From Macrostomum lignano (Eukaryota), in NCBI GenBank assembly GCA_002269645.1, contig NIVC01000334.1:62001-126000 (forward strand): a stretch of DNA of 64,000 nucleotides. The letters run 5' to 3'. Positions 10,307 to 46,592 of the stretch are shown here, piece by piece. The notes under the pieces are model-generated. The model did no database searches. It was not told the DNA's origin and saw only the letters and a list, made by a program, of their open reading frames with translations. Position 1 is the first letter of the stretch. Every line of letters begins with the position of its first letter. A program made the position numbers and the translations under genes.

Positions 10307-11649
10307 GACCGCTCAATCTACAGTGAAATATAAGTGATTCCTATGGACCTTAAATCGATCAATAATAAAGGACAGTGTTTCGTATTTAAAAAAATATATT
10401 ACTGGATTCAGCTGGCTGAAACCGGAGTCGGGGGGAGGCAGGCAGGCAGACAGACAGACGGAGGGGCTTGGATGGGGTCACCCTCAGCTAGTAGAACCCC
10501 AAGATAGAAAGTAAACGCCAGGAGGTGAGAGAAAAACGAAGCAGACAGAAGTAGAGAGGGAGAGGAAGAGAATCGCAAAACTGTGCGTGGGAGTGCTTAA
10601 GGGCAGTAAAAAACACAGCAAACTGCCTGACTGTTGGGGCCACCCTCATTTGCTCGACCCCGGGCTGATGACTAACCTTGTGCCGCTCCGCCGCCGCCAA
10701 CAAAATAGGCCAGTCTATTCGGGCTTATTCAACACTACTACTGCTTGGGCTTATTTATATTATAGAGAGAGAGAGACGGAACTCTATTCACTGGTTGTGA
10801 GAGTCTGGGAGACCGTACAAAATTGAGATCTCCAAGGAGAGTCTCTTGCTTGGTATTGGACAAGATTGGACACACTGGAAGGCTCTCTCTCTCTCTCTCT
10901 ATCTCTCATATATAACGGGCAGGGCATGCTGGCTGAGCTTGTGTATAAGGAGGATGACTCTCTCCTCTCCTCTCCCCTCGCCCTCTCTCCCCTGTACAGG
11001 GCAGAGTGTACTGTACAGGGCTTTGGACCTAGCGCCGCCCACGCTCCCCGCCTGCCCTCAGGAGACCTCGTCACTCTCTGCCTCCTCCCCCTCTGCCCAA
11101 TTGCCGTCTTTCTGCCTCCGACACCGCTGGCCTCCCCTCCATCGCTAAATACATTCCACAGGCCGCCGAATCGGGCTCTTATTACTCCGCCCTTCCCTCG
11201 GCCGAACTCTCTCTCTCAATGCTCATTTTAGCGTGATGCGTTTATATATATGCGAAATGTATTAAAAAATTAGAAGATTTATCAGCAGCCAGCCAGTTGA
11301 ACTTAAGTACGGCTCGAACGCGAAAATAGCAAACAAAAAAACAACAAATTGCATAGCCCCTAGGCGACCGCCATAGCTATTAGTACACGCGGAGGCGATT
11401 GCGCGTAAACATAGTGTTCCTGTCTGTTGGCAGGATAAATGAACTGCGTGGGATTGGAACTATTGGGTTTGGGTAATAGATGAATGCATGGAAGGAGATG
11501 GATTATTGCCTCCAGATATGCACCAGGCGACCAATGTTGCAGAAGTCATGTCTAGTGCTGAATTTAGCGAAGCGCAGTTATCATATACGAGTACAGAGTG
11601 CCTTAAAAAGTACTACGTACTAGAGTGACTAGGGAGAGTGCCCACACAG

Positions 11650-13020
11650 AAGAGTGCCAGAATACAGAACAGAGTGCAGCAGAGTGCCAGAATACAGAAC
11701 AGAGTGCAGCAGAGAGTGCCAGAATACAGAACAGAGTGCAGCAGAGAGTGCCAGAATACAGAACAGAGTGCAGCAGAGAGTGCCAGAATACAGAACAGAG
11801 TGCAGCAGAGAGTGCCAGAATACAGAACAGAGTGCAGCAGAGAGTGCCAGAATACAGAACAGAGTGCAGCAGAGAGTGCCAGAATACAGAACAGAGTGCA
11901 GCAGAGAGTGCCAGAATACAGAACAGAGTGCAGCAGAGAGTGCCAGAATACAGAACAGAGTACAGCAGAGAGTGCCAGAATACAGAATGGAGTGCAGCAG
12001 AGAGTGCCAGAATACAGAGTGCAGCAGAGTGCCAGAATACAGAGTGCAGCAGAGTGCCAGAATACAGAATGAAGTGCAGCAGAGAGTGCCAGAATACAGA
12101 GTGCAGCAGAGTGCCAGAATACAGAATGGACTGCAGCAGAGAGTGCCAGAATACAGAGTGCAGCAGAGTGCCGGAATACAGAATGAAGTGCAGCAGAGAG
12201 TGCCAGAATACAGAACAGAGTGCAGCAGAGAGTGCCAGAATACAGAACAGAGTGCAGCAGAGAGTGCCAGAATACAGAACAGAGTGCAGCAGAGAGTGCC
12301 AGAATACAGAACAGAGTGCAGCAGAGAGTGCCAGAATACAGAACAGAGTACAGCAGAGAGTGCCAGAATACAGAATGGAGTGCAGCAGAGAGTGCCAGAA
12401 TAGAGTGCAGCAGAGTGCCAGAATACAGAATGAAGTGCAGCAGAGAGTGCCAGAATACAGAGTGCAGCAGAGTGCCAGAATACAGAATGGACTGCAGCAG
12501 AGAGTGCCAGAATACAGAGTGCAGCAGAGTGCCAGAATACAGAATGAAGTGCAGCAGAGAGTGCCAGAATACAGAGTGCAGCAGAGTGACAGAATACAGA
12601 GTGCAGCAGAGAGTGCCAGAATACAGAACAGAGTGCAGCAGAGAGTGCCAGAATACAGAACAGAGTGCAGCAGAGAGTGCCAGAATACAGAACAGAGTAC
12701 AGCAGAGAGTGCCAGAATACAGAATGGAGTGCAGCAGAGAGTGCCAGAATACAGAGTGCAGCAGAGTGCCAGAATACAGAATGAAGTGCAGCAGAGAGTG
12801 CCAGAATACAGAGTGCAGCAGAGTGCCAGAATACAGAATGGACTGCAGCAGAGAGTGCCAGAATACAGAGTGCAGCAGAGTGCCAGAATACAGAATGAAG
12901 TGCAGCAGAGAGTGCCAGAATACAGAGTGCAGCAGAGTGCCAGAATACAGAGTGCAGCAGAGAGTGCCAGAATACAGAAGAGTGCAGCAGAGTGCCAGAA
13001 TACAGAACAGAGTGCCAGAG
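11650..13020. repeat. ~32-bp minisatellite (agagtgccagaatacagaacagagtgcagcag) with shorter variants
   Basis: Direct periodicity, e.g. gtgcc at 11716 and 11748. Confidence 0.95.
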
Positions 13021-13732
13021 TGTCTGTGCATAACAATGCGCAGATCCAAGCGCCCGAAAAGGCGGAAAAGTCGCACGGAGTCACATGCATGAGATGAGAG
13101 GCTAGATACTGATCTCGCAATCATGGCATATCACACAGCGGCAGAGAAACGCTGTGTAATAATCATTGGCGGAAATCAGTCCAGGCCTTGAACCACTAAG
13201 CAGTTTAAACAAGCCCAGCTCCAAAGGCTGATGCGTTCAAGAAATGCCAATTGAAAAGCTTTAAAAAATGTAGGATGAAAAAACAGAGGCCTTGAATGCA
13301 AGATTAGATTTGCAATGGCTCGGCACACAGACCTGCTAAAAGCCAATAGAAAAAGTACCAGATGACACCCGTCAAAGGCCATCAGTGTATATTTATAATC
13401 CTAGTAAAAGCAGTCATTGCAGGTTCAGAAACCATTTTTGCCAAAGTAGCAGATACTTGTAGTGTACATGTCTGATGAAGAGGCGACTGTTGCGTCACAA
13501 GCGCGTCACGCAAATTGCAGAATTGTAAAAGAGTCGCGCGAAAGAGTCGTCCAAGAATCGTTGTGTTGAAGCTTAACTTTCTACTAACTCAGTAGGCTAG
13601 TTAGAGTGCAATTGGAGTTCAAAAAGGCTAAAACTGAGCGCTTATTGTGTAACTGTAACTTGTGACGCACTAACGATTCTACCCTAAAGCGCTTCTTCTG
13701 CAACTTTTTAGCGCCTTGGAGAATCGCTCCAG

Positions 13733-14250
13733 AATCACTAGAGTCGCTCCAGAGTCACTTGAGCCGCTCCAGAGTCACTTGAGCCGCTCCAGAGTCACTA
13801 GAGTCGCTCCAGAATCACTAGAGTCGCCCCAGAGTCACTTGAGTCGCCCCAGAATCACTAGAGTCGCTCCAGAATCACTAGAGTCGCTCCAGAATCACTA
13901 GAGTCGCCCCAGAATCACTAGAGTCGCTCCAGAATCACTAGAGTCGCCCCAGAATCACTAGAGTCGCTCCAGAATCACTAGAGTCGCTCCAGAATCACTA
14001 GAGTCGCCCCAGAATCACTAGAGTCGCCCCAGAGTCACTAGGGTCGCTCCAGAATCACTAGAGTCGCTCCAGAGTCTCTTTAGTCGCTCAAGAATCACTA
14101 GAATCGCCCCAGAGTCACTAGAGTCGCTCCAGAATCACTAGAGTCGCTCCAGAATCACTAGAGTCGCCCCAGAGTCACTTGAGTCGCTCCAGAGTCACTA
14201 GAGTCGCTCTAGAGTCACTAGAGTCGCTCCAGAGTCACTAGAATCGCCCC
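13733..14250. repeat. 20-bp minisatellite (gagtcgctccagaatcacta)
   Basis: Direct reading. Confidence 0.95.
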
Positions 14251-14669
14251 GGAGCCGACTAATTTTGAGTATTAAAAAGCATTTAATACAAAACATTCTA
14301 GGCAATAAATTATATACAAAATCCATTTACGGCATCAGAATAAAAGTCTCAAACATGCTACTACGAGCGTATAAGTAGAACCTAAAAGTCTATCTAAATG
14401 TATGCACAACATCGACAAAACAAAGCATTAATACGGCACTGGCAGTTTAAACTGAGGACACTACAAGCTTAGCTTAAAAGGAAGCATATATGAGACAATG
14501 TCAGTCAATAACAGATAAATATACTGCAATTTGAATGTCAGGGTTTTGTCATAGTAACAGGGACAAAACGATAACTACACGTAAACAGCTTCAGCTAATC
14601 AGACAGTAGGGAATTTATGTCATTAATATTCAATAACTTGACGGATAAATGCCGGTCTTAACTTTACTG

Positions 14670-15470
14670 ACCAATCAGAGAGCAACAGGCCTTCATTCCA
14701 ACCAATAAGAAAACAGTGAGACTCCAATTTTCCAACCAATCAGAGAGCAGCAGGCCTCCATTCCAACCAATCAGAGAGCAGCAGGCCTCCATTCCAACCA
14801 ATCAGAAAGCAGTGGATTCCATTCCAACCAATCAGAGAGCAGCAGGCCTCCATTCCAACCAATCAGAGAGCAGCAGGCCTCCATTCCAACCAATCAGAGA
14901 GCAGCAGGCCTCCATTCCAACCAATCAGAGAGCAGCAGGCCTCCATTCCAACCAATCAGAGAGCAGCAGGCCTCCATTCCAACCAATCAGAAAGCAGTGG
15001 ACTCCATTCCAACCAATCAGAGAGCAGTGGGACTCTAATATTGCAACCAATCGGAGAGCAGCTGGACTCCAATATTGCAACCAATCAGAGAGCAGCTAGA
15101 TTCCAATATTGCAACCAATCAGAGAGCAGCTGTACTCCAATATTGCAACCAATCGGAGAGCAGCTGGATTCCAATATTGCAACCAATCGGAGAGCAGCTG
15201 GACTCCAATATTGCAACCAATCGGAGAGCAGCTGGACTCCAATATTTCAACCAATCGGAGAGCAGCTGGACTCCAATATTGCAACCAATCGGAGAGCAGC
15301 TGGACTCCAATATTGCAACCAATCGGAGAGCAGCTGGACTCCAATATTGCAACCAATCGGAGAGCAGCTGGACTCCAATATTGCAACCAATCGGAGAGCA
15401 GTATGACTCCAATATTTCAACCAATCAGAGAACAGCGGGACTCCATTCCAACCAATCAGAGAGCAGCAAA
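14670..15470. repeat. CCAATC-containing minisatellite: 31-bp units grading into 34-bp units
   Basis: ccaatcagagagcagcaggcctccattccaa, then ccaatcggagagcagctggactccaatattgcaa; abuts the MXRA7-like stop codon. Confidence 0.95.
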
Positions 15471-16576
15471 CTAAGAATAGAGTCGCATCTGGCTGCGCAC
15501 TTCATTCAGAGAAGCTTCAGGCGGCAGTTCGCCGCCAGCCTCGCCGCCCTGCCGTTCAGCCAGGATGCCGCAGATCTGCCTCAGCTGGTCCATCACGGCG
15601 TCCCGCTCGAGTTGCAGCTCCTCCTCCGACAGGCTTTGGAGAATTTTTGTCTGCTCGGCGCGTTTCAAACTGCCGGGAAGGTGAGTGAATGGGACAGCAT
15701 CTGCGGCTGCCACCTGTTGCTGCTGCTGCCCCATCTCACTGGCTCCTGCATCCTCAGCGCTGACTGACTTGGCTGCCTGGTCTGATGAGGTGCGGGAGAA
15801 TTAGGGTGGGTTGCTAATCTAATCTACATATAATGGATTGCTAATCTACTCTGCAATGGATTTCTGATGGATTGCTAGTCTAGAATGGATTGCTAGCCTA
15901 GATAGGATTGCTAACCTAGAATGGATTGCTAGCCTAGAATGGATTGCTAGCCTAGAATGGATTGCTAGCCTAGAATGGATTGCTAGCCTAGAATGGATTG
16001 CTAACCTAGAATGGATTGCTAGCCTAGATAGGATTGCTAGCCTAGATAGGATTGCTAGTCTAGATAGGATTGCTAGTCTAGATAGGATTGCTAGTCTAGA
16101 ATGGATTGCTAGCCTAGAATGGATTGCTAACCTAGAATGGATTGCTAGCCTAGAATGGATTGCTAACCTAGAATGGATTGCTAACCTAGAATGGATTGCT
16201 AACCTAGAATGGATTGCTAGCCTAGATAGGATTGCTAGTCTAGATAGGATTGCTAGCCTAGAATGGATTGCTAGCCTAGAGTGGATTGCTAGTCTAGAAT
16301 GGATTGCTAGCCTAGAATGGATTGCTAACCTAGAATGGATTGCTAGCCTAGAATGGATTGCTAGTCTAGAATGAAAGCCAGTCTCATCGAAGCGGGCTAA
16401 GCACCGTTTGCTCGCGCGCTGTAAGCCGCCGCCTCGGCCGCCCAGCGGGCCGTCAGCTGGCGCCGCCTCATCAGCTGCTGCGCCAGGGTGGCCAGCAGGC
16501 AGGCCAGCACGGCGGTCAGGCCAATCAGCACAGCCTGGGTGGTCCCCTCAGCTTCGTAGAGCCCGCCGCCAGTCAT
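15471..16576 (-). CDS. MXRA7: MXRA7-like single-pass membrane protein, 2 exons (16576-16405, 15781-15471), 160 aa
   Basis: Exon 1 has a TM segment (AVLIGLTAVLACLLATLA). A phase-1 join AAC G|AC CAG gives a continuous ORF. C-terminus FTHLPGSLK...LSEEELQLE...QLRQICGIL...EVRSQMRLYS resembles the MXRA7 conserved tail (FKYSPGKL...TKEELEEE...QLAAIFKLM...DVQEQLRLY), recalled from memory. Confidence 0.72.
15860..16372. repeat. 18-bp intronic minisatellite (gaatggattgctagccta)
   Basis: Fills most of the MXRA7-like intron. Confidence 0.95.
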
Positions 16577-16904
16577 TTTAATGGAGAAATCTGAAAAATC
16601 AATAAAATATACGAGATACTTACTGTATTCGCTACTTATAGTAAGCGAATGATGAAATATTTTAATGAATGGAGACATACACCAATTGGCTATTTTCATG
16701 GAAGAAAAAATCGAATTAGATCTGTTATATTTTGGTATATTTATATGTCTATATGTTATATATGTCTGAATGACTTATAACTAACCTTCATCAAGCAATA
16801 GCTAAATTCAAGTATTCACAGTGAGCTGGAGTAACTATGAAACATGTTTAACATTAAGAAGTACTTTAGGAGCACGCAACAAATTTATGAGTAAATCGAG
16901 TACT

Positions 16905-17075
16905 TAGTTAGTACGCATGTACTTTGCAAGTACGCATGTACTTTGTTAGCACGCACGCACTTTGTAACTACGCATGAACTTTTAAATTACGTATGGAGTT
17001 TGTAAGTACGGATGTACTATACAAGTACGGATGTTCTTTCTAAGTACACGAGTACTTTAAAAGAACTAATGCTAT
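16905..17075. repeat. Degenerate ~19-20 bp repeat (gtacgcatgtacttt) between SDR39U1 and MXRA7-like
   Basis: Direct reading. Confidence 0.75.
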
Positions 17076-17110
17076 AAAAAGTTCGGTTTGCACTAAATCA
17101 AATGCAGACT

Positions 17111-18679
17111 TTAAGAGCCAAACAAATCTCGCATAGCCTCGCGCAGGTCAACGAATCGAAACTGATAGCTGGTCTCCAGAGTGCGCCGGGGCGAAACGAA
17201 CGCACCGTCAGTGAGAACGCCGGCCCGCTCGGTGCCGAACATCAACCGGACGACAGCGGCAGGCGTCGTCAGCAGAGCCGGACGTCGCAGACTGGCAGCC
17301 AGAGCGGCGGCCAGTTCAGCGTTGGTGTTGAGGGCCGGCGCCACGGCGTTAAGCACGTCGGAATTGAATGACGGCGTCGGAGGCGGCAGGTCGGCCAGCA
17401 GGGCGTGCTCAAGGACGCCAACAGCGTCGCTGATGTGCACCCAGGCGACGGGCTGACGTCCGCTGCCGGTCGGACCGCCGATGCCCAGACGGAACGGCCA
17501 GGCCATACTGGCCAGGGCGCCACCGTCGCGGCCGAGGGCGACGCCCATGCGGACGGCGATTTGGCGAGTGTCGCCGGCAGCGGCAGCTGCTGCTTCTGTT
17601 GATTTTGCGGCCCCCTCGAACACGGCGGCCTCGATGCTGGCGCAGAGCCGGCCGGCCAGGCTGGGGTCCGGCGGCCCTGCGTAGGACTCGTCGAACACGG
17701 GCGGCGGGTCGGCGCGCATCTGGGCGGAGCGACGGGTTGATCGGGGTTTAATGTATGGGATTAGATCCTAGATATGGGAATATAATGACATGGAAATTTG
17801 GGACCAGAAATAGTAAAATTGGGGAAATTAATTAAGTATTTGCAACTTAAATTACATGGAATTCGATAATTGGCGAGATTAGTTGATGGAAATTAGTAAA
17901 AGTTAGGATCTCAAGATAGGGATCTCAATTGATGGGGATCTCAATTGATGGGGATCTCAATTGATGGGGATCTCAATTGATGGGGATCTCAATTGATGGG
18001 GATCTCAATTGATGGGGATCTCAATTGATGGGGATCTCAATTGATGGGGATCTCAATTGATGGGGATCTCAATTGATGGGGATCTCAATTGATGGGGATC
18101 TCAATTGATGGGGATCTCAATTGATGGGGATCTCAATTGATGGGGATCTCAATTGATGGGGATCTCAATTGATGTGGATCTCAATTGATGGGGATCTTGA
18201 TGGGATCTCAATTAAAAAGTATTCTTAGGATAGGGAACTCAAGATGGTGATCTCAAGATGGACTCTCTACTCACAGATGACGGGTAGTAGCCAACAGCTG
18301 ACACGCCGACAAGGCGACTGGGCGGTTTCGGTCTGACAGCGGCGGCCGCGGCGGCCAGGCACCGAATCCGGCCGATGCGACTGTCGAACAGCTCGCTCAC
18401 GTAGCGCCTGTAGGCCACCGTCGACAGCCGCAGCGCCGGCGCCGCGTCCAGGATGCTCCGACCGGACAGATTGCACACCAGCTCGACTCCGTCAGGCAGG
18501 CCGCAGCGCTCGACCTCCGGCCAAGTCAGCGCGTCCTGCTGGCGGGCGTCGCCGGCGCCGCGACTCCTGTCGACGGTGACTACCCGGTGGCCGGCGGAGC
18601 GGAGGCTGCGCACCAGGTAGCGCCCGATGAAGCCGCTGGCGCCGCCGACGGCTATGACAGATGGCCGGACGCTGGGAGA
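17111..18679 (-). CDS. SDR39U1: SDR39U1 / TIGR01777-type NAD(P)-binding epimerase family protein, exons 18679-18275 and 17719-17111; no genomic ATG
   Basis: Rossmann motif VIAVGGASGFIG; VSAVGYYPS; RMGVALGRDGGALASMAWPFRLGIGGPTGSGRQPVAWVHISD; LNAVAP; GAFVSPRRTLETSYQFRF. Phase-0 intron TCT|GTGAGT...cccag|ATG. Confidence 0.9.
17925..18210. repeat. 16-bp intronic minisatellite (gatggggatctcaatt)
   Basis: Direct reading, inside the SDR39U1 intron. Confidence 0.95.
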
Positions 18680-18914
18680 CTGCGGGGAGGGAGGAAGAAC
18701 GAGAGCGTCAAAGTAGTGGCAGGTCAACTGGGGTCACCCGGTGTGGAAAAAAAACTTTGGAAAAAGTGTAAAAATACTCACGACCCAGGTCAGGTAAGGT
18801 CAGTATTCAGGTCACGATTTACGGTTTATTTTAAGGAATCCCTATACAGAGTCATCTAAGGTCATACTACTAGGGTCGCCTAAGTTTACATTATTAGGGT
18901 CATTTTTATTACAC

Positions 18915-19090
18915 CGACAGATCAGCCGCAGCTATTGCGTGGCGCATCTGAAGGCTGCGTACGGCTGTTCAGTCCAAGGACTGGGGAGGGGGTCACCACA
19001 CACAGCCTCAATTACCCCAGCTAATCCTGGTACCAATTTTACAGCTGGGTCGTGAGTCCGACGCTCTAATCACTTAGGCTACAATCCCTT
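18915..19090 (-). mobile_element. Truncated tRNA-derived SINE-like element
   Basis: Minus strand starts gtagcctaagtgattagagcgtcggactcacgaccc (A-box / tRNA 5' half-like), followed by a body with cagctgtaaaattggtaccaggattagct; no B box seen. Confidence 0.45.
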
Positions 19091-19139
19091 AGGCCTTAGG
19101 GCCTTCTAAAACCACACTATTCAGTGTTATCTAATGTTA

Positions 19140-19345
19140 CACTGTCCAGGGTCATTTAAGGTCACACTATCCAGGGTCATCTAAGGTCAATTCTATTCAG
19201 GGTCATCTAAGGTCATTCTATTCAGGGTCATCTAAGATCACACTGTCTAGGATCATATAAGGTCGGTAATACTATTAAGGGTCATCTAAGGTCATTCTTT
19301 TCAGGGTCATCTTAAATCACACTATTTAGGGTCATCTAAGGTCAG
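19140..19345. repeat. ~25-bp degenerate minisatellite (agggtcatctaaggtcattctattc)
   Basis: Direct reading. Confidence 0.85.
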
Positions 19346-19944
19346 CATGTTGAGCGATTGGATACCATTCTATTAAAAGTGAAAAATATCAAACATTCTA
19401 TAGATAGGCAAAGTTATTCCCAAAAAGCAACACAAGAAGCTTATCCAATTCCTTTAGCCTTTGCTATAAAATATAACTTTGGATTTATTGTTTTAACCCG
19501 ATCGAAAGAAAACATAGCAGAAAAAATAGCTAAATATTTTAAGAGCCATGAGGTGCAAAAGTGACCTTAAAATGCGGTTAAAGTGCATTAGGTACGAAAG
19601 GTAAACATTGCCTGTTTTAGGATGAATTTGACTAAAAAGCTGTTTATAATGGCATTGGCAATGATAAAGTCAAATACCGGTATGTTAAAAGTATCAATAT
19701 ATAAACTTGCACACTTTTCTGGATTTAACATCGCACCACTATCAAACACCTGTGTTTCTTTGCCTCTATATCGATGCTAACAAACAGTATTGACAGAAAA
19801 ATAAGTGACTTGGTAAGCGTTTTATGACTCTTAGTTAATAAGGCAGGCCACTTCAAATTGGCTTGAATTAGCAGCTTACTTTCTTTGTTTACTATAGCAA
19901 CGAGAATATTAGATATTAAGACATGAAAACCAGCATAGTCGATA

Positions 19945-20141
19945 GTTGCCATGGAAACAAGCAGATTAGTTGGTTACAGACAGTTTTGAGTTACTATGGC
20001 AAAAAAACATACTAAAGAGTTACCATGGTAACAAACATCCTAGAGCTACCATGGTAACAAACATACTATAGAGTTACCATATGGCAACGAACATCCTAGT
20101 CGCTACCATAGAGGAAAAAATTAACCGGTTGCCATGGCAAC
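19945..20141. promoter_or_regulatory. Cluster of RFX-type X-box palindromes
   Basis: GTTGCCATGGAAAC 19945, GTTACTATGGCAAA 19990, GTTACCATGGTAAC 20019, GCTACCATGGTAAC 20045, GTTACCATATGGCAAC 20073, GTTGCCATGGCAAC 20128. Confidence 0.6.
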
Positions 20142-20177
20142 AGCCCGATTCCCATAGAATCACCAGCAGGCCGCAAG

Positions 20178-21253
20178 TCACTCCAGTTCGCCAACTAGAA
20201 AATCGCGAACCAAAGACAACGCCTTGGCCCGATGAGAAATTGTGTTCTTCACTTCCGGCACCATCTGGGCGAATGTCTCGTGAAATCCGTCCGGCTTGAA
20301 TATCGGGTCCCAGCCGAATCGATTGTCGCCGGCCGGCTTGTCCGCTATGGAGCCCGGACACACTCCGGCGAAAACCTTCACCTCCTGGCCGGGCCCGCGA
20401 CTGTAGGCGAACACGCAGCGAGCCTCGGCCGACTTGTCCGGGAATGCGGCCAACAGTTTGGGCAGGCCGTCCGGGCCCAGAGCGTCCAGGAACCACTTGA
20501 TGTACACCCCCGGTAGGCCGCCCAGGGCGTTGAAGCACAGGCTGGTGTCCTCAACCAGCACAGGGCCGCCGACTCGCTCGGCCGCTAGGCGGCACTTTTC
20601 GCGGGCCACCTGCACACGGAATGAGGTTAGGCATGGGCTCGTTTAATGGGATTCTGATCGCCCCCTACAGAACCCATCTGGTTGCTATGCCCAATACAGT
20701 GTCTTTATCTGGTTGCTATGCCAAATACAGTGTCTTTATCTGGTTGCTATGCCAAATACAGTGTCTTTATCTGGTTGCTATGCCAAATACAGTGTCTTTA
20801 TCTGGTTGTTATGCACCTTACAGTGTCTTTATCTGGTTGCTATGCCAAATACAGTGTCTTTATCTGGTTGCTATGCACCTTACAGTGTCTTTATCTGGTT
20901 GCTATGCACCTTACTGTGTCTTTATCTGGTTGTTATGCCCCCACAGTGTCTGTAGCTGGTTGCTATGCCCCCTACAGTGTTTGTATCTGGTTGCTACGCC
21001 CCTTACAGTACATTTTTCTGGTGGCTATGCACTATGCAGTGTTTTATGTGGTTGCCACCCAATTCCAGCTCTACATTTACAGCAGTTCATGTCTCACCAT
21101 CTCAGGCAAGCCTTGCAACTCTGGCAAATCAATATCCTTATTAACAACTCTGTCTGACAATCCGGCAGTTAGTAGGATGCTATTTAACTCGCGCAGTTTG
21201 TTTGGATTGCCTGTAACAAAGGTGACTAGCTTGATCTTGCCAGATGTGGCCAT
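20178..21253 (-). CDS. ITPA: Inosine triphosphate pyrophosphatase (HAM1 family), 2 exons (21253-21098, 20609-20178), 195 aa
   Basis: [67 protein letters not shown]. Phase-0 intron ATG|GTGAGA...tgcag|GTG. Confidence 0.96.
20670..21060. repeat. 31-32 bp intronic minisatellite (atctggttgctatgccaaatacagtgtcttt)
   Basis: Fills the ITPA intron. Confidence 0.92.
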
Positions 21254-22439
21254 TTATTTGAGAGTAGCATAAAAGTTTAATAAATAGTTTGATGTTTAAT
21301 TTGATTAAGATTTCAAAATTGAAGTTTTATAAGTGTCTACAGTAGTTACTAACTGTCTAGTTAGACTATGTTGTTATGTGTTGATTGGCTGTACAATTTA
21401 ATCTAAATTCATAATTAGTCAACTATTGACTACACATTAATTGAGTTGAGGTGTTGGCTTGCCCTCCCCCAAAGTAAAGTATAGGGCCATGACCCTCTCT
21501 CCTAGAAAAAACATTAGAATATTTGATATTTGACAGGACTTTCCAATTCAGTTAAAGTTTTGAACTCGCTACACTGGTAGCCATTCTAAGCATTGGTTAA
21601 TAAGTATATTATAAGTAGCATAAAACTTGAGAGTGGATTGTTTTGCATTGAATAATCACTGGTTACATATTAGCCTCTATGTTGCCACATTAGCCTGTTA
21701 GCAAATCTTATCCTGAATCAGTTTCATGCTTTTCAGAATGAAGCTGACTGACATGGTAAGATGTAAGTCAGAATATTATATAATTTGACTCTCAGCTTCT
21801 TGTCAGAAGTTCATCTTGATATTTGTAGATGATTCAGCTAATATAAAATTTTATCATGGATTCATAAAAGTGCATTGATCATCAAAACTTTCATGTTGAA
21901 ATAAGTTAGCCAATAGGCTCTGCATACCAGGTAGTTGCAAATGTTGTGATATTTGTTTATAGGGCCTATATTATAAAATAAACAATAATAAAATTAAAGA
22001 AATGAATTAATTAATAAACAAATAATGTTGAAATGTTAAATGTTAAATATTAAAATGAATGTCTTGCTTTCCAGCCATGTCTTGCACAATGCATGTATAT
22101 TTGCATAATTCATTGAAAATTATCTTTAAAATATATAATTATTGGCTCAAATGCAAAGGCAAACCAATAAGGCATAAATAATAGTTGTTGTATATTCAAA
22201 ATTATTTTCCCATACATCAAAAAATTAGCACTATCAAAAAGAAACATTCTATAATTGATAATGCAATTAAAATAATTTTCAAAAATGCCAACTAAAAAAT
22301 GAACTTAGGTAGGATATTCAATATACTTTATCTATTATATTATGTTAGCCAAAATCACTAATTGAATTGACTTTTGGTAAAAGGGTTTTGGTAAATCAAC
22401 TTTTGGCAGAAAGTTTTTCAGCAAATCATCTAGGCCTAG

Positions 22440-23120
22440 TATTCAATGAATACAATCCACTTTGGTAACAGCCATTTTGGTAACAGCCACTTCGGTAACA
22501 AAAAATGAACACTTTGATAACTGCCACTTTGATAACAAAGCAGATTTACATCTGTCAACACTTTATTTTTATATTAATTAGGTTTAGCAAAAATTAGTTT
22601 AATAATTAACATCTCAAATATCTTATTGCACATATTGTTAAACTTTCTAGTTAAACTGTATTATACTTTGTTTAAACTTGCACAGTAAACTTTATGAAAA
22701 ATTTAAAGGCAAAAAAAATTAAGCAAAGCAAGCTCCCATACATACATTGAAATTGAAAAAATTAAATAATTAATGAAGAAAAAAGTAGATTCTGTAATTT
22801 TAAGTCACTATTTGCTAACTAGATCAGAGATTCCAATGTACACAGTATACAAAATTTGGCCAATTTTAGGATGTCTTGGGTGCATGAAATCTGACTCATC
22901 CAGAAATTAAAATAGATTGGTTAACTTAAAACACTTTAAAAACAAGTTAAACACATGCAGGTACGCATGTGTTGTGTCATTCTTTCTTTAAAGTTTGTTT
23001 GCACATCCTTTTAGAGGCATCAGAGCATATCAAATAATGCATATTATATTATTCTCATTTGTTACCAAAGTGGCTGTTACCGAAGTCAAAGTGGACTGTT
23101 ACCGGATTCAGCAGAATTGT
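22440..23120. mobile_element. MITE-like element with inverted arrays of ccacttYggtaaca
   Basis: Left ccactttggtaacagcc...acttcggtaacaa (~22465-22502) is mirrored by ttgttaccaaagtggctgttaccgaagt (~23059-23086); both ends lie near taggccta. Confidence 0.5.
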
Positions 23121-23632
23121 CTTAGGCCTAATTGCTAGTTATAAGATTGTTGTCAAACATTTTCATTGACTTTAATATGCATACATAGGCTACACAATAT
23201 ACCTATATTTATAACATTCTTGCAAATATTTAGGCTTATATTATTCTCAATAATAGTTGTGCTCAGATACACTTGAACTGAAGATAAACCCAAAAATTCA
23301 TATTATACTAGGCCCTATGTACTATCTAATATAGCCGTATAGGTAATAGGCCTAGGCGTAATAACTTAGTTAAATAAGTGCTTGGGCTCATAGATTCACA
23401 GACTACAGAGAAATAGCAACTCTTAGATTGAGTAATCTTCACCATATTTTCCACAGTCTACAAGCTATGTCTAGCACTAAACTGACGAGTAAATTTATGG
23501 TTCATTAAAGCTGCAGGTTTAGAAGATAAAACAGAATTGTGTTGGAATTTAGGAGCCGCATGCTACGAAAAACTTTTTGTTTCTATGAAAATGTAAAATT
23601 TAATTGAACTCTTTAGGGTCTGTATAAAAGCA

Positions 23633-26600
23633 GGGCACGGGTCGTTCTCAAAGCTAGGTCACAACTTTTTGTTATTGCAAAAAAAGTTTATACATCGACC
23701 AATAATCGTACAAAAAAAATTCTTTCGACAATTTCTGTAAGAAGCTGCTACTAAAAACACAAGAAAACTTGAAATTGACAAGAAATCAAGGCTATTTGTT
23801 ATTCTTTGTTGCGGAAAATAAACGACAAAAATATTAAAGAGAAAATAAAATTTTCTTCTATTTTTATTTTAAATATGCAGTTAAATTTCTTTTGCAAAAA
23901 TAAAAGAACAAGAAATTGACAAAGGAAATGTTTTTGAGCACAGCATTTTGTTACTCTGCTCTAAATCCCAGACATTTAAAATTATCGTGTGCGAAAAAGT
24001 GCGAAATTATTATAGCATGCACTCGAAAGGACTTCGATCAGTTTAACTAATCACTGAATTAAGAAGTCTAAATAAGTCTTGAAAGGTTGAATTAAAAATC
24101 AAGTTTTCACTATGTATCTTTTCAAAGTTAAGATGATTCGACAAATAAAGAATGTTCATTTTTATGGTGAATAGAATTGTTTTCATTTTTACATTAAATA
24201 TAATAAAATCTAACTAATAATAGAAAAAGTCAGGGAACTATCCTTGAACACCAAAAAGCACATTGTGGATTTAATATCGACTGCATGTTCCTTAATAAAG
24301 GAATTCGGATACTAGTATATATTTGATTATTTGTAGCATAATTTCTGAAAACTATAACTTGCTTGATTTTACTTTAAGTACTTATTACATTAATACTTAT
24401 ACCAAAGCTACATGTACTTAAAACAAAAAATTATAGTTACTTATTAGACATTTTACTCCAATTAACTTAAAATAATTCAAATTTATTTTAATTTATTTAT
24501 TTTTTGAAACTTTTTGGAAAATAGACAAAATTGAATTATTAAATTACCAAAAACCTACTAGCTTAACTAAAATAGCAATTAGTCTTTAAGAAAAGATTTC
24601 ACTTGTTAATTGAGAAAAATGAGGATGTGCGAGGTGTAAAAATGCGAAAGAGCATGCAGGAAACAGAGACAAACAAAAATGTAGGTAAAAGACACTGCAC
24701 ATGCACATAATATGATAACCAGACATAATGCGCACACTGAAACACCAGTAGCAATGACGCCCAAGCTTTTGATGATCACAAGCGAAAAGGCAAAACCCAG
24801 CCATCTAATCAAAGAAGTAGACTATAGCACGCATATTGAGTGCATCACGCATTTTTTGCAGAGAAGCTCGAAAATTAACATTGTATTCTGTGCACAACCA
24901 CCAACTGCGACAGGGTCTGCCGGGGGATTTGTGGGCACGCGGTCGCGGATACAAATCGGAGGAGTCGCTGACCATTCTGAAATTACAAGCTAGTACATGT
25001 AATTTTGTGTATTAATATATTTAGCCCGCTTTATTTCTATGCTCTCGTCCGCCTCTCGTTAATGCATCCCCAGACTCATGCAAAAATTAAACTTATGATC
25101 GAACTATGCATGGCTTCCGTCCCTCGCTTTGAGTCTCTCACCTCCCCATAGTTCCATCAACCTTACCGTAGTGGCTTACTATGCAAAAATCATCCCTCCG
25201 CATCTTACACAGGCTACTTCAGGCTGTAGACTGTACTACACTATTAATTAGTTGCGCTAAGGAATCTACATGTATTTTGCTCGCAGCGCAGCGCGCTGCT
25301 CAAAGAAGTTTAGATCTATCTAGATATTCTAGTAATTTCAGGTTTGTCCATAGACTAGAGCTCATGAGATGAGAATTCCATTATCTAGTACATTTAATAT
25401 GAATGAACTGCGTGTGTGTGAGTGCTGTGCATACATATGTATAATATACGAGTAGTTTATGGGCCAAATTATTGTGTGGCACAATTCTTGGCATCACTCA
25501 GCAGGCACAAGATGCAGTTAAGCAGCGCACGAAAATTCTACAAAAGAAATTGAGCCTGGTTGAGGTGATGCGAGGAGGCAGATCCACACAATCTCAGTGA
25601 ATACACCAGACTGCACCAGATACGAGTCCAGTCGAATGTGCGCACTGGTCTAAGCAGCACACGCATGTCCTTCTGACAATGACGGCACCTAGCTTCGTCC
25701 AAGCCTTTGCCAGCGTCACTGACAGCGTCAATACTACCATGCAGTGCCACCTGCAGCACCGACAACGGCAATTCCTCCAGTTAGCCCACAACAGTGGCTA
25801 AACTGAGGGACAGGGAACCTACCCACAGAAGACACACACATACACACACAGCACCGGCAGCAGCACTCTGACAGCATAACCTAAAGCTCCATGAGCTCAG
25901 TTTTCAAGCATTGAAGAAGCAGAAGCAGTCATCTTGGATCCAGGGATCAGGAAGAGTGTTGCATGTCCGACATGTGCTGTTTCCGTGGAAAAAGGTGATG
26001 GAGCAAATTAATCAACACTTACTATCTAGCTCGTATTAAGACTAAAAAACTGAGGGCCTCAGTGAGGCAAGCTGGGATTAAACCAAAGAAAATTTTTACT
26101 ATACCTTTTTACCATACTTTTACTATACTTCTATAGTATAGTAGAGAGGTACTCTATTTAAATGCAGTAAGAAGTGAAACAAATTTATATATTTAATTAT
26201 TAAATTAAAATAATTCAAGGTAAATAACTAATTTAACCAATTTATTAGGAGTACATGTATTTATTATAATAAATTGATTTTTATACCTTACACGAAATAA
26301 GCTCTACATTCATTTCTTAGCTTGGGGCCCATCTGTATAAGGTCAGTTTCTTCAAAATGCTGATTAATTAATTAAGGCCTGTTGTCTTTACTTAAATTTA
26401 TAAGGGCATCTTAGAAGTTAATATTACTATATAATACATGTATAATATTATTACTATATTATAATAATATAGTTGCAATTTTAATGACTATTGAATAAGT
26501 CTAAATGCTTCCCCTATTGACTCTAAATATATGGTACCTTTCCCTTCAGAAAAAATTAGCATAGAATGACTTGATGAAAACAAAAAAAATCATTTCGAGA

Positions 26601-32014: not shown

Positions 32015-33385
32015 ATGCGCGAGTGTATCTCTATCCACATCGGCCAGGCCGGAGTGCAGATCGGCAACGCCTGCTGGGAGCTCTACTGTCTGGAGCACGG
32101 CATCCAGCCCGACGGCATGATGCTAGCCGGCAGGGAGAAATGCGACAGCTCAGTAGAGACGTTCTACTCCGAGACTAACTCGGGCCGTTATGTGCCGAGA
32201 GCTGTGTTCGTAGACCTGGAGCCCACCGTGATTGACGAAGTTCGCACTGGAACTTACAGGCAGCTGTTCCACTCGGAGCAGCTCATCACGGGCAAGGAGG
32301 ACGCGGCTAATAACTACGCCAGAGGCCAGTACACCATTGGCAAGGAAGTCATCAACACCGTGCGAGAGGTAGTGTCCAGAGCGGTGGAGAACTGCAGCAG
32401 CCTGCAGGGCTTCTTTCTGTTCCACTCGTTCGGCGGCGGCACTGGCGCCGGCTTCACCTCCCTGCTGATGGACAAGCTGTCATCCGAGTACGGCAAAAAG
32501 GCCAAGGTGCAGGCGTCCATCTACCCGGCGCCGCAGGTCAGCACCGCGGTTGTTGAGCCGTTCAATGCCATCTTGTGCACCCACGGCACATTGCGACACG
32601 CCGATGTCACATTCATTGTGGACAACGAGGCCATCTACGACATCTGCAGGAGAAATCTAGACATTGAGAAGCCGACTTACACTAACCTGAATAGGCTGAT
32701 TAGTCAGATAATGTCTTCTATTACAGCTTCGTTGCGCTTTGAAGGCTCCCTCAACGTGGACATAACGGAGTTCCAGACCAACCTCGTGCCCTATCCCAAG
32801 ATCCACTTCCCCCTAGCAACGTACGCTCCCATCATTTCGACCGAGAAAGCAAACCACGAGCAGCTCAAGGTCCGCGAGATCACCAACGCCTGTTTCGAGA
32901 CATCGAACCAAATGGTGAAGTGCGACCCTCGGCATGGAAAGTACATGGCCTGCTGTCTACTCTACCGCGGAGACGTCAACTCCAAGGAAGTCAGCGACGC
33001 CATTCAGAAGATCAAAGGCAAGCGCGAAATTCAATTTGTGGACTGGTGCCCAACCGGGTTCAAGGTGGGCATCAACTACCAGCCGCCCACCACGGTGCCT
33101 GGAGGCGATCTGGCAAAGGTGCCGCGAGCCGTCTGCATGCTGAGCAACACCACCGCCATCGCTGAGGCCTGGGACCGGCTGGCGTACAAGTTCGACCTCA
33201 TGTACTCCAAGCGGGCCTTCGTGCACTGGTACGTCGGCGAAGGCATGGAGGAGGGCGAGTTCGCTGAGGCGCGCGAGGACCTGGGCTCCATGCAGAAGGA
33301 CTACGAAGAGGTCGGAGTGGACAGCGTCGAAGGCGAGGAGGAAGAGGTCGAAGAGATGGACAAGGAAGGCGCTGATGGGGAATAA
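32015..33385 (+). CDS. TUBA: Divergent, intronless alpha-tubulin, 456 aa
   Basis: MRECISIH start, [27 protein letters not shown](A)[27 protein letters not shown]; acidic tail. AATAAA overlaps the stop codon. Confidence 0.97.
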
Positions 33386-46527: not shown

Positions 46528-46592
46528 GGACAAGCCTAACTTACCACTGACGTGGCAAGCAATAGAACCCTACTGTGAAACGAAGGACCAGG

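What the first reader, a model, noticed from the sequence alone, without database searches (positions are those of the whole stretch)
18640..18740. SDR39U1 has no start codon of its own: candidate gene initiated by the spliced-leader AUG
Seen: the frame is closed by TGA at 18736-18734 and contains no ATG before the NAD-binding GGASGFIG motif (the ORF track start at 18727 is TTG). A strong pyrimidine tract and acceptor (ctctcgttcttcctccctccccgcag|) sits exactly in phase 0 at 18679, eight codons before VIAVGG. The two obvious upstream donors (18781, 19879) give no ATG-containing exon in a compatible phase. Established: flatworm spliced leaders end in AUG, and in Schistosoma that AUG can serve as initiator Met. 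Inference: the protein is M(SL)-SPSVRPSVIAVGG..., so translation depends strictly on trans-splicing.
Basis: partly seen in the sequence, partly recalled or inferred. Interest (0 to 1): 0.75.

Follow-up and report, generated by a model that had tools for sequence, protein, structure and literature searches.

The report
Flatworm gene borrowing spliced-leader start codon
A conserved oxidoreductase gene (SDR39U1-like) in the flatworm Macrostomum lignano has no start codon of its own and most likely gets its AUG from the trans-spliced leader RNA, a mechanism already documented in flatworms, so this is an ordinary new example that mainly explains why databases call the protein 'partial'.

Summary
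The window is Macrostomum lignano (Mlig_3_7, NIVC01000334.1). On the minus strand lies a two-exon SDR39U1/TIGR01777-type gene (18679..18275, 17719..17111; 337 codons). Its frame is closed upstream by TGA 18736-18734, and it has no in-frame ATG before codon 136. A branch-point-like CTTTGAC, a 94% pyrimidine tract and cgcAG end at 18680, in phase 0.

The M. lignano spliced leader (SL) ends in ...TTGCATG, so SL + exon 1 reads M-SPSVRPSVIAVGGASGFIG. The family profile is covered end to end from residue 9, so only an initiator is missing.

Two independent annotations start models exactly at this AG, and all three genome copies are flagged 'partial'. The gene sits between ITPA and an MXRA7-like gene in one annotated transcriptional unit. 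The ORF is constrained between copies, while the sequence upstream of the AG takes frame-breaking indels.

No SL-junction read could be examined. A second AG 8 nt downstream would put the SL-AUG out of frame. The ITPA exon-1 donor is also phase-compatible.

SL-AUG initiation is established in flatworms (Cheng et al. 2006) and acknowledged for Macrostomum. Verdict: interpretation supported (about 0.7), a new member of a known kind, modest interest.

The parts
18734..18736 (-). In-frame TGA that closes the reading frame upstream of exon 1.
   Evidence: In copy L001 a 2-nt tract deletion puts a different stop in frame.
18707..18713 (-). Branch-point-like CTTTGAC (matches YNYURAY). The A is at 18708, 28 nt from the AG.
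   Evidence: The ~70 nt upstream of the AG are identical in all three copies apart from the 2-3-nt tract-length indel. Function is inferred.
18682..18705 (-). Polypyrimidine tract (pyrimidine fraction 0.94 over the 17 nt scored upstream of the CAG). Its length differs between genome copies (0, -2, -3 nt).
18680..18681 (-). Proposed SL trans-splice acceptor AG (cgCAG|). It is the first AG after the branch-point-like motif.
   Evidence: The NCBI CDS of copy Mlig015606g3 and the UniProt ML2 models start at the next base.
18275..18679 (-). Coding exon 1 (405 nt, 135 codons, SPSVRPSVIAVGGASGFIG...). It contains no ATG in any frame. With the SL's ATG in front it is in frame.
18672..18673 (-). Alternative AG 8 nt downstream (cccAG|C). 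SL joined here gives a 60-codon out-of-frame ORF.
   Evidence: This locus's NCBI protein (PAA85349.1) starts at VRPSV, compatible with a transcript 5' end at 18671.
17720..18274 (-). Intron (GTGAGT...CAG, 555 nt) holding a 16-nt tandem repeat of about 18 copies (17906-18197). Intron length is 555, 788 or 1035 nt in the three copies.
17111..17719 (-). Coding exon 2 (202 codons plus TAA at 17113-17111). It contains the DUF1731 C-terminal domain and begins with the first in-frame ATG of the gene (codon 136).
20178..21253 (-). Upstream same-strand gene ITPA (Mlig029812g1; exons 21253..21098 and 20609..20178) with its own ATG. The exon-1 donor ATG|GTGAGA is phase 0.
15471..16592 (-). Downstream same-strand MXRA7-like gene. 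Acceptor tttttcAG at 16592-16591, exon start 16590, own ATG at 16576. The SL-AUG would form a 6-codon uORF (MISPLK*) whose TGA overlaps the main ATG.

Best explanation
The gene is a functional M. lignano orthologue of SDR39U1, an NAD(P)-binding oxidoreductase of the TIGR01777/YfcH family. It is the internal cistron of an operon-like transcriptional unit, ITPA - SDR39U1 - MXRA7-like.

Proposed mechanism:

1. The pre-mRNA is resolved by spliced-leader trans-splicing at the acceptor ...CCTCCCCGCAG|TCT (18680|18679).
2. The 35-nt SL ends in AUG, so the mature mRNA reads ...UUGCAUG|UCU CCC AGC....
3. The SL-AUG is the first AUG on the message, and there is no other before codon 136. It initiates M-SPSVRPS-VIAVGGASGFIG....

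Shown here: the sequence anatomy, the phase, the completeness of the domain, constraint on the ORF, the absence of a plausible intergenic cis-exon, and the annotated 5' ends.

Taken from the literature: the SL sequence, and the fact that flatworm SL-AUGs can initiate translation.

Inferred: that this acceptor is the one used, and that ribosomes start at the SL-AUG. Residue 2 is Ser, so the Met is probably removed and the mature protein would start with Ser. This follows from known methionine-aminopeptidase specificity.
For: - **Organism and SL:** the top hits are M. lignano proteins, and locus L002 is identical to the window. The SL is CGGTCTCTTACTGCGAAGACTCAATTTATTGCATG followed by GTAAG in the SL RNA gene (PMC8629364).
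- **Reading frame:** SL + 18679 gives a 338-aa ORF.
- **Completeness:** TIGR01777 positions 1-292 of 292 map to residues 9-331, and human SDR39U1 4B4O matches at E=1.8e-51 over chain residues 3-291. In 87 of 104 homologues the Met lies 6 residues before the Gly motif; here the SL-Met would lie 13 before it.
- **Annotation:** PAA86934.1 (Mlig015606g3) and UniProt A0A1I8HS24 and A0A1I8HSI4 begin with SPSV, exactly after the AG. All three NCBI copies are 'partial' and none has an upstream exon. In that annotation, 5' boundaries of genes inside transcriptional units come from mapped SL-containing reads (PMC5730564).
- **Operon context:** ITPA is Mlig029812g1 and this gene is g2. In L001 the three genes are g2, g3 and g4 of one unit.
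- **Acceptor anatomy:** there is a branch-point match 28 nt upstream, a pyrimidine fraction of 0.94, and this is the first AG after the branch point.
- **Upstream is non-coding:** tract indels of 2 and 3 nt between copies break the upstream frame.
- **ORF constraint:** the CDS has 1.2-1.3% substitutions and 0 indels in 1014 nt. The intergenic DNA has 4.4-4.7% substitutions and 12-13 indel events in about 1400 nt.
- **No intergenic cis-exon:** no ATG exon ends at a consensus donor in a compatible phase.
- **Precedent:** SL-AUG initiation is shown in S. mansoni and inferred in Echinococcus. Macrostomum authors call the SL's final ATG a translation start codon (PMC10468722).
Against: - No SL-junction read, 5' RACE product, ribosome footprint or peptide was available. 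No transcript-derived copy of the protein exists in the searched collections.
- The three NCBI models start at +0, +6 and +9 nt from the AG. The model for this very locus (+9) fits a 5' end after the second, out-of-frame AG.
- The acceptor (CCGCAG) does not match the most enriched trans-acceptor motif [T/C]TNCAG, although fewer than half of annotated sites do.
- A 'partial' flag alone is weak evidence. The downstream gene is also flagged partial yet has its own ATG.
- dN/dS between copies is 0.65 on only 12 changes, which is not informative.
- The raw ITPA-to-acceptor distance is 1498 nt, longer than typical operon spacing. Tandem Repeats Finder (TRF) accounts for only about 330 nt of it as tandem repeats.
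- The SL-AUG context (U at -3, U at +4) is weak by vertebrate Kozak rules (from general knowledge).
Confidence: 0.7

Rival explanations
1. Trans-splicing occurs mainly at the second AG (18673-18672). The SL-AUG is then out of frame and opens a 60-codon overlapping ORF. Most mRNAs from this gene would not make SDR39U1, or would need non-AUG or leaky initiation.
For: The second site is also a CAG with a pyrimidine fraction of 0.82. PAA85349.1, the model for this locus, starts at VRPSV. That is what a 5'-open ORF call would give for a transcript starting at 18671.
Against: The upstream AG is the first after the branch-point-like motif and has the stronger tract. Another copy and two ML2 models start exactly at the first AG. 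The third copy starts at +6, where no AG precedes, so the offsets may simply be fuzzy assembled 5' ends. The ORF is conserved without indels, which argues that it is translated.
Confidence: 0.1
2. The start codon comes from a cis-splice. The ITPA exon-1 donor (GAG ATG|GTGAGA, exon 21253..21098, phase 0) joins the 18679 acceptor and gives an in-frame 389-aa ITPA(1-52)-SDR39U1 fusion.
For: This is the only ATG exon with a consensus GT[AG]AG donor in a compatible phase within 4.8 kb upstream. Both genes lie in one annotated transcriptional unit. Sharing of acceptors between cis- and trans-splicing is reported in parasitic flatworms (PMC12582326).
Against: No annotated model in either assembly has this junction. 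The one ITPA-SDR fusion model (P0004) uses a different junction and is riddled with frameshifts. Phase compatibility is a 1-in-3 coincidence. Homologues have no N-terminal extension. A 52-residue fragment of the ITPase fold is unlikely to be useful (inference).
Confidence: 0.05
3. An unannotated upstream exon supplies the ATG. It would have a non-consensus donor or lie further away.
For: The enumeration covered only single ATG exons within 4.8 kb and relied on consensus donors. About 35% of M. lignano donor regions lack the GT[G/A]AG motif.
Against: Two RNA-seq-informed annotations found none in any of three copies. The weak candidates (ATG|GTAACT in a CCATGGTAAC tandem repeat) are not conserved in position. 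The region just upstream of the conserved acceptor block is rearranged between copies. The domain is already complete.
Confidence: 0.05
4. Translation starts at a non-AUG codon, either TTG 18727 on untrans-spliced RNA or ATA 18655 / ATC 18628 within exon 1. The SL would then be irrelevant to initiation.
For: TTG 18727 is in frame and downstream of the TGA in this copy and in L003. Near-cognate initiation exists in eukaryotes (general knowledge; PMC9851317).
Against: In copy L001 the 2-nt tract deletion puts TTG out of frame although the ORF is intact. ATA 18655 lies inside the first beta-strand (VIAVGG). An AUG placed in frame at the 5' end of the mRNA would normally capture scanning ribosomes first (inference).
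Confidence: 0.04
5. The gene is a recently inactivated, untranslated pseudogene that lost its ATG.
For: There is no ATG. dN/dS between copies is 0.65, not distinguishable from neutrality. The TIGR01777 score (188 bits) is below NCBIfam's cutoff of 207.
Against: All three copies keep a 337-codon ORF and both splice sites. There are 0 indels in 1014 nt, where about 9 would be expected at the intergenic rate. Substitutions are 3-4 times fewer than in flanking DNA. Profile coverage is full-length, including the Gly motif and DUF1731. The gene is assembled as an expressed transcript in the annotation.
Confidence: 0.05

Closest known systems
Flatworm mRNAs whose initiator Met is the 3'-terminal AUG of the spliced leader (Cheng, Cohen, Ndegwa & Davis 2006, J Biol Chem 281:733; Schistosoma, with Echinococcus examples in PMC3510090)
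   Same: - The SL ends in AUG.
- The acceptor lies in phase 0 directly in front of a conserved ORF that has no AUG of its own.
- The N-terminus matches orthologues only if the SL-AUG is used.
   Different: - The species is a free-living, early-branching macrostomorph rather than a neodermatan parasite.
- The specific gene (SDR39U1) is not, to my knowledge, on the published lists.
- No experimental proof exists here.
- A tandem out-of-frame AG lies 8 nt downstream.
M. lignano operons / polycistronic transcriptional units resolved by SL trans-splicing (Wudarski et al. 2017, PMC5730564; Ustyantsev & Berezikov 2021, PMC8629364)
   Same: - The three neighbours (ITPA, SDR39U1, MXRA7-like) lie on the same strand and are numbered within one transcriptional unit.
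- Both downstream genes begin at acceptor sites.
- The intergenic DNA is repeat-rich, as those authors describe.
   Different: - The raw ITPA-to-SDR39U1 spacing (1498 nt) exceeds their 1-kb repeat-adjusted threshold, unless more of it is repeat than TRF shows.
- Their papers do not discuss SL-AUG-dependent cistrons.
slORFs: ORFs created by SL addition (slORFfinder, PMC9851317)
   Same: The ORF exists only on the trans-spliced mRNA, because the start codon is supplied by the SL.
   Different: Here the SL-dependent ORF is the canonical conserved protein itself, not an N-terminal extension or a novel frame. No ribosome profiling data exist for M. lignano in what I could search.
Human SDR39U1 (PDB 4B4O) / bacterial TIGR01777 (YfcH) oxidoreductases
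   Same: Homology is full-length, with an N-terminal GxxGxxG Rossmann motif and a C-terminal DUF1731 domain. There is no long N-terminal extension.
   Different: - Homologues start with their own Met 6 residues before the motif. Here 7 extra residues and no encoded Met precede it.
- Ala-rich insertions are present.
- The score is below the NCBIfam equivalog cutoff.

Membership tests
SL-AUG-initiated flatworm mRNA (Cheng et al. 2006 class) | The organism's spliced leader ends in AUG immediately before the SL donor site. | tested here: met
   From the literature, not from the window. The M. lignano SL is ...TTGCATG followed by GTAAG (PMC8629364). All reported flatworm SLs share this feature (PMC12582326). 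No SL RNA gene lies in the window.
SL-AUG-initiated flatworm mRNA (Cheng et al. 2006 class) | The mRNA is SL trans-spliced at an acceptor directly upstream of the ORF. | tested here: inconclusive
   - Indirect support: models in two annotations start exactly at the AG, and the gene is cut out of a transcriptional unit by a pipeline that uses SL reads.
- Against: models of the other two copies start at +6 and +9.
- No junction reads were accessible.
- The gene is not in the stored part of the {TRANSSPLICED} table.
SL-AUG-initiated flatworm mRNA (Cheng et al. 2006 class) | The SL-AUG is in frame with the conserved ORF, with no intervening stop. | tested here: met
   SL + 18679 gives a 338-aa ORF, MSPSVRPSVIAVGG....
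SL-AUG-initiated flatworm mRNA (Cheng et al. 2006 class) | No alternative AUG could give a protein with an orthologue-like N-terminus. | tested here: met
   There is no ATG in any frame in exon 1 in three copies. The first in-frame ATG is codon 136. The domain starts at residue 9.
SL-AUG-initiated flatworm mRNA (Cheng et al. 2006 class) | Translation demonstrably starts at the SL-AUG. | not testable with these tools
   This needs N-terminal proteomics, initiation-site ribosome profiling or a reporter assay.
SDR39U1 / TIGR01777 (YfcH) oxidoreductase family | Full-length match to the family profile above the curated cutoff. | tested here: inconclusive
   Profile positions 1-292 of 292 are covered at E=2.5e-55, but 188.1 bits is below the cutoff of 207.35.
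SDR39U1 / TIGR01777 (YfcH) oxidoreductase family | N-terminal Rossmann GxxGxxG motif and C-terminal DUF1731 domain. | tested here: met
   GGASGFIG lies at residues 12-19. PF01370 matches residues 9-66. PF08338 (DUF1731) matches residues 287-334 at 47.1 bits, above its cutoff of 27.
SDR39U1 / TIGR01777 (YfcH) oxidoreductase family | Closest characterised relative is SDR39U1. | tested here: met
   The best PDB hit is human SDR39U1 (4B4O) at E=1.8e-51. The next hit is at 7e-18.
M. lignano operon (Ustyantsev & Berezikov criteria) | Adjacent same-strand genes, with the downstream gene SL trans-spliced and a repeat-adjusted intergenic distance under 1 kb. | tested here: inconclusive
   - The genes share a strand and a transcriptional-unit numbering.
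- SDR39U1 to the MXRA7-like gene is 520 nt.
- ITPA to SDR39U1 is 1498 nt raw, about 1170 nt after removing TRF repeats.
- No RepeatMasker track was available.

The most novel reading that the evidence does not exclude
The two tandem CAG acceptors 8 nt apart (18680 and 18672) are both used. Because the only available start codon is the SL's AUG, the choice of acceptor acts as a binary translational switch. The upstream AG gives full-length SDR39U1. The downstream AG gives a 60-codon out-of-frame peptide and no enzyme. That would let an internal cistron of an operon be regulated independently of its co-transcribed neighbours. The different annotated 5' ends of the near-identical copies (+0 and +9) are what one would expect if both junctions are abundant.
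Probability: 0.1. Interest if true: 0.55.

Novelty: new member of a known kind. Interest (0 to 1): 0.3.

Why it matters
If confirmed, this is a clean case in a free-living, early-branching flatworm of a conserved housekeeping-type enzyme whose translation depends on trans-splicing. There is no encoded AUG before codon 136.

That would extend a phenomenon characterised mainly in parasitic Neodermata. It would support the view that conservation of the SL 3' AUG across flatworms is functionally enforced.

Practically, it explains why GenBank and UniProt list this protein as 'partial', and probably many other M. lignano proteins too. It also suggests a simple annotation fix: prepend the SL-AUG when the trans-splice site is in phase and the ORF is 5'-open.

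M. lignano is transgenic-tractable, so this gene's 5' region could serve as a compact reporter for trans-splicing-dependent translation.

It does not reveal a new mechanism.

Tried and rejected
- **Transcript-derived proteins.** I looked for copies carrying the SL-Met (Logan and other assemblies) through the homology search and cluster listings. None exist for this gene; only genome-derived NCBI and UniRef entries were found.
- **Gene IDs in papers.** I searched paper text and supplements for Mlig029812, Mlig015606 and Mlig004341. Only an ITPA copy (Mlig015606.g9, {TRANSSPLICED}) turned up. The SDR39U1 gene is not in the stored part of the table.
- **ATG depletion of exon 1.** I considered it as evidence and rejected it, since the codon-shuffle P(0) is 0.46.
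- **'Partial' flag as proof.** I rejected this because the downstream MXRA7-like gene is also 'partial' but has its own ATG 14 nt into the exon.
- **dN/dS between copies.** There are too few changes (12) and the ratio is 0.65, so it is uninformative. I used indel and substitution contrasts instead.
- **Cis-exon enumeration.** My first thresholded run used a cutoff stricter than a genuine donor and had a phase error for the 18671 acceptor. I redid it with the published GT[G/A]AG consensus.
- **Conserved ATG-containing block about 300 nt upstream (18933-19060).** It has no usable donor, and its frame and junction differ between copies because of a 24-nt indel.
- **tRNA or SINE identity of the tRNA-like stretch at about 19040-19110.** ARAGORN and Rfam found nothing, and it occurs only once in the window.
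- **Rfam mir-3937 hits.** These lie inside the 16-nt intron repeat and score far below the gathering threshold (29 vs 84 bits). I dismissed them as chance.
- **Primary reference.** Cheng et al. 2006 is not held in the library. I cite it through PMC9851317, PMC3510090, PMC5832876 and PMC12582326.
Full report
**1. What is there**

The window is Macrostomum lignano. The spliced conceptual protein matches GenBank PAA85349.1 (BOX15_Mlig029812g2) at 100% identity. The fetched locus L002 (GCA_002269645.1, NIVC01000334.1) is identical to window 24670..11111 on the reverse strand.

On the minus strand the gene has two coding exons:
- Exon 1 is 18679..18275 (405 nt).
- Exon 2 is 17719..17111 (609 nt including TAA).
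- They are separated by a GTGAGT...CAG intron.

- TGA at 18736-18734 is in frame.
- TTG is at 18727.
- There is no ATG before GGASGFIG.
- The acceptor ...CTCTCGTTCTTCCTCCCTCCCCGCAG|TCT has its exon starting at 18679 in phase 0.
- The only two consensus donors in the intergenic region are at 18781 and 19879, and neither closes an ATG-initiated ORF in phase.

One small correction: seven codons, not eight, separate the acceptor from VIAVGG.

**2. Identity and completeness of the protein**

- NCBIfam TIGR01777 (YfcH family) aligns over profile positions 1-292 of 292 to residues 9-331. The E-value is 2.5e-55, and the score of 188 bits is under the curated 207-bit cutoff.
- Pfam finds the Epimerase N-terminus (residues 9-66) and DUF1731 (residues 287-334).
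- The best solved structure is human SDR39U1 (4B4O, E=1.8e-51), with chain residues 3-291 aligned to query residues 9-334.
- Among 104 homologues that start with Met, 87 have the Met exactly six residues before the Gly motif.

So nothing is missing at the N-terminus except an initiator. The first encoded in-frame ATG is codon 136, at the start of exon 2, and would delete the Rossmann motif. The complete absence of ATG from exon 1 is not in itself unusual (codon-shuffle P(0)=0.46).

**3. Is the ORF real and used?**

The genome holds three copies: L002 (the window), L001 (Mlig015606g3) and L003 (Mlig004341g1). All three keep the 337-codon ORF, the same splice sites and the same ATG-less 5' end.

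Comparing the window copy with the other two:
- The CDS shows 1.2-1.3% substitutions and no indel in 1014 nt.
- The ITPA-to-SDR39U1 intergenic DNA shows 4.4-4.7% substitutions and 12-13 indel events in about 1400 aligned nt.
- The intron length is 555, 788 or 1035 nt in the three copies.

At the intergenic indel rate about nine indels would be expected in the CDS, so the ORF is under constraint. dN/dS (0.65 on 12 changes) has no power.

Directly upstream of the AG, the pyrimidine tract differs by 2 nt (L001) and 3 nt (L003). The upstream frame, including TTG 18727, is therefore not conserved. Coding starts at or after the AG.

**4. The acceptor**

- A perfect YNYURAY match (CTTTGAC, A at 18708) lies 28 nt upstream of the AG.
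- The 17 nt before the CAG are 94% pyrimidine.
- This is the first AG after the branch-point-like motif.
- The ~70 nt before the AG are conserved between copies apart from the tract-length indel, whereas the DNA just beyond is rearranged. The rearranged part includes the 18781 GTGAGT, which is GTGACT in the other copies.
- CCGCAG does not match the most enriched M. lignano trans-acceptor motif [T/C]TNCAG, but that motif is present at only 9551 of 21754 sites.

A second CAG lies 8 nt downstream (AG 18673-18672, pyrimidine fraction 0.82). SL joined there would open a 60-codon out-of-frame ORF.

**5. Link to the spliced leader**

The single M. lignano SL is CGGTCTCTTACTGCGAAGACTCAATTTATTGCATG, followed by GTAAG in the SL RNA gene (PMC8629364). 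SL + 18679 reads ATG TCT CCC AGC... and gives a 338-aa ORF.

Annotation evidence is indirect but consistent:
- In Mlig_3_7, transcriptional units were cut into genes at peaks of mapped SL-containing reads and at poly(A) sites (PMC5730564).
- PAA86934.1 (L001) starts at the very base after the AG.
- The independent ML2-based UniProt models A0A1I8HS24 and A0A1I8HSI4 also start at SPSV.
- No model in any copy has an upstream exon.

The other two NCBI models start at +6 (L003) and +9 (this locus). The +9 start is what a 5'-open ORF call would give for a transcript beginning after the second AG. Use of that out-of-frame site therefore cannot be excluded.

A 'partial' flag alone proves little. The downstream gene is also 'partial' although it has its own ATG.

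**6. Genomic context**

- ITPA (Mlig029812g1; own ATG at 21253; exons 21253..21098 and 20609..20178) lies upstream on the same strand.
- An MXRA7-like gene lies 520 nt downstream of the SDR39U1 stop.
- In L001 the three genes are g2, g3 and g4 of one unit. In L003, SDR39U1 and the MXRA7-like gene are g1 and g2.
- An ITPA copy is flagged {TRANSSPLICED} in a published table (PMC5816591 supplement).

This is an operon-like unit. The 1498-nt ITPA-to-SDR39U1 spacer is long, and TRF accounts for only about 330 nt of it.

The downstream gene is a useful internal contrast. Its acceptor (tttttcAG|ATTTCTCC, exon start 16590) puts the SL-AUG out of frame. That creates a six-codon uORF (MISPLK*) whose TGA overlaps the gene's own ATG at 16576.

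**7. Rivals**

- Across 4.8 kb upstream, the only ATG exon ending at a consensus GT[AG]AG donor in a compatible phase is ITPA exon 1 itself (GAG ATG|GTGAGA, phase 0). A cis-splice to 18679 would give an in-frame 389-aa fusion. No model shows this junction, homologues have no N-terminal extension, and the phase match is a 1-in-3 coincidence.
- Non-AUG starts are unlikely. TTG 18727 is out of frame in L001.
- A pseudogene is unlikely given the constraint.
- A remote or non-consensus upstream exon cannot be strictly excluded.

**8. Comparison with what is known**

- SL-AUG initiation was demonstrated in Schistosoma by Cheng et al. 2006. The SL-AUG was in frame in 28% of trans-spliced transcripts, and more than 40 cDNAs required it (summarised in PMC9851317).
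- In Echinococcus, 143 of 187 SL-bearing clusters are full-length only with the SL ATG, and some strictly need it (PMC3510090).
- All reported flatworm SLs end in ATG (PMC12582326).

The mechanism is therefore known, including awareness of it in this genus. The new element is this particular gene as a clear obligate case, in an internal cistron, in a free-living flatworm.

**9. Verdict**

- Novelty: a new member of a known kind.
- Interest is modest (0.3). The main value is the annotation fix and a handy reporter for trans-splicing-dependent translation.
- The most novel reading not excluded is an acceptor-choice translational switch between the two AGs (about 0.1).

Noticed in passing
window 16570..16592 (minus strand): The downstream MXRA7-like gene has a tttttcAG acceptor 14 nt before its own ATG. 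SL addition there would create a 6-codon uORF (ATG ATT TCT CCA TTA AAA TGA) whose stop overlaps the main start codon (ATGA). This looks like a termination-reinitiation or leaky-scanning arrangement, the opposite solution to the SL-AUG problem from its upstream neighbour.
   Followed up: partly
L003 2544..4260 (NIVC01002290.1): The ITPA copy at this locus (PAA59174.1, 128 aa) is frameshifted after ...NALGGLPG relative to the intact 195-aa ITPA of the other two loci. It is either a decaying duplicate or an assembly error.
   Followed up: partly
P0004, P0121, P0123, P0127 (UniProt ML2-based models): Older gene models fuse SDR39U1 with the MXRA7-like gene (about 500 aa), or ITPA with SDR39U1 (410 aa with many frameshifts). 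Polycistronic transcripts were evidently modelled as single fusion proteins.
   Followed up: partly
window 17906..18197; also 19113..19344, 20016..20109, 20676..21055, 16000..16373: Tandem repeats are dense in introns and spacers. A 16-nt unit repeats about 18 times in the SDR39U1 intron, and its copy number differs between genome copies. There are also 25-, 26-, 31- and 18-nt arrays. Weak Rfam mir-3937 hits inside the 16-mer array are chance.
   Followed up: partly
window 18990..19110 (minus strand): A tRNA-like stretch (…GCCTAAGTGATTAGAGCGTCGGACTCACGACCCAGC…) in the ITPA-to-SDR39U1 spacer is highly conserved between the three copies. ARAGORN and Rfam do not call it, and there is no second copy in the window. 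It may be a degenerate SINE.
   Followed up: partly
window 32015..33385 (+): An intact, intron-less 456-aa alpha-tubulin ORF with its own ATG (Tubulin and Tubulin_C domains). The public annotation also lists a 258-aa Tubulin_C gene model on this strand that spans the whole ITPA/SDR39U1 locus, which looks like a mis-joined model.
   Followed up: partly
window 46575..51953 (+): A 1792-aa uninterrupted BEL/Pao-type LTR-retrotransposon polyprotein (DUF1759, RVT_1, Peptidase_A17, integrase zinc-binding domain, DUF5641). It is apparently an intact element.
   Followed up: partly
window 53405..56759 (-): Two adjacent ORFs (584 aa with RVT_1; 540 aa with RNase H) from a non-LTR-like retroelement.
   Followed up: partly
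window 41293..42078 (+): An exon encoding the C-terminal lobe of a protein kinase, followed by a long RE/RD-rich low-complexity tail (RERERE...QERQRE).
   Followed up: no
window 21098..21100 (minus strand): ITPA exon 1 ends in the codon ATG immediately before its GT donor (GAG ATG|GTGAGA), mimicking the ...ATG|GT architecture of the SL RNA itself. It is in phase with the SDR39U1 acceptor.
   Followed up: partly
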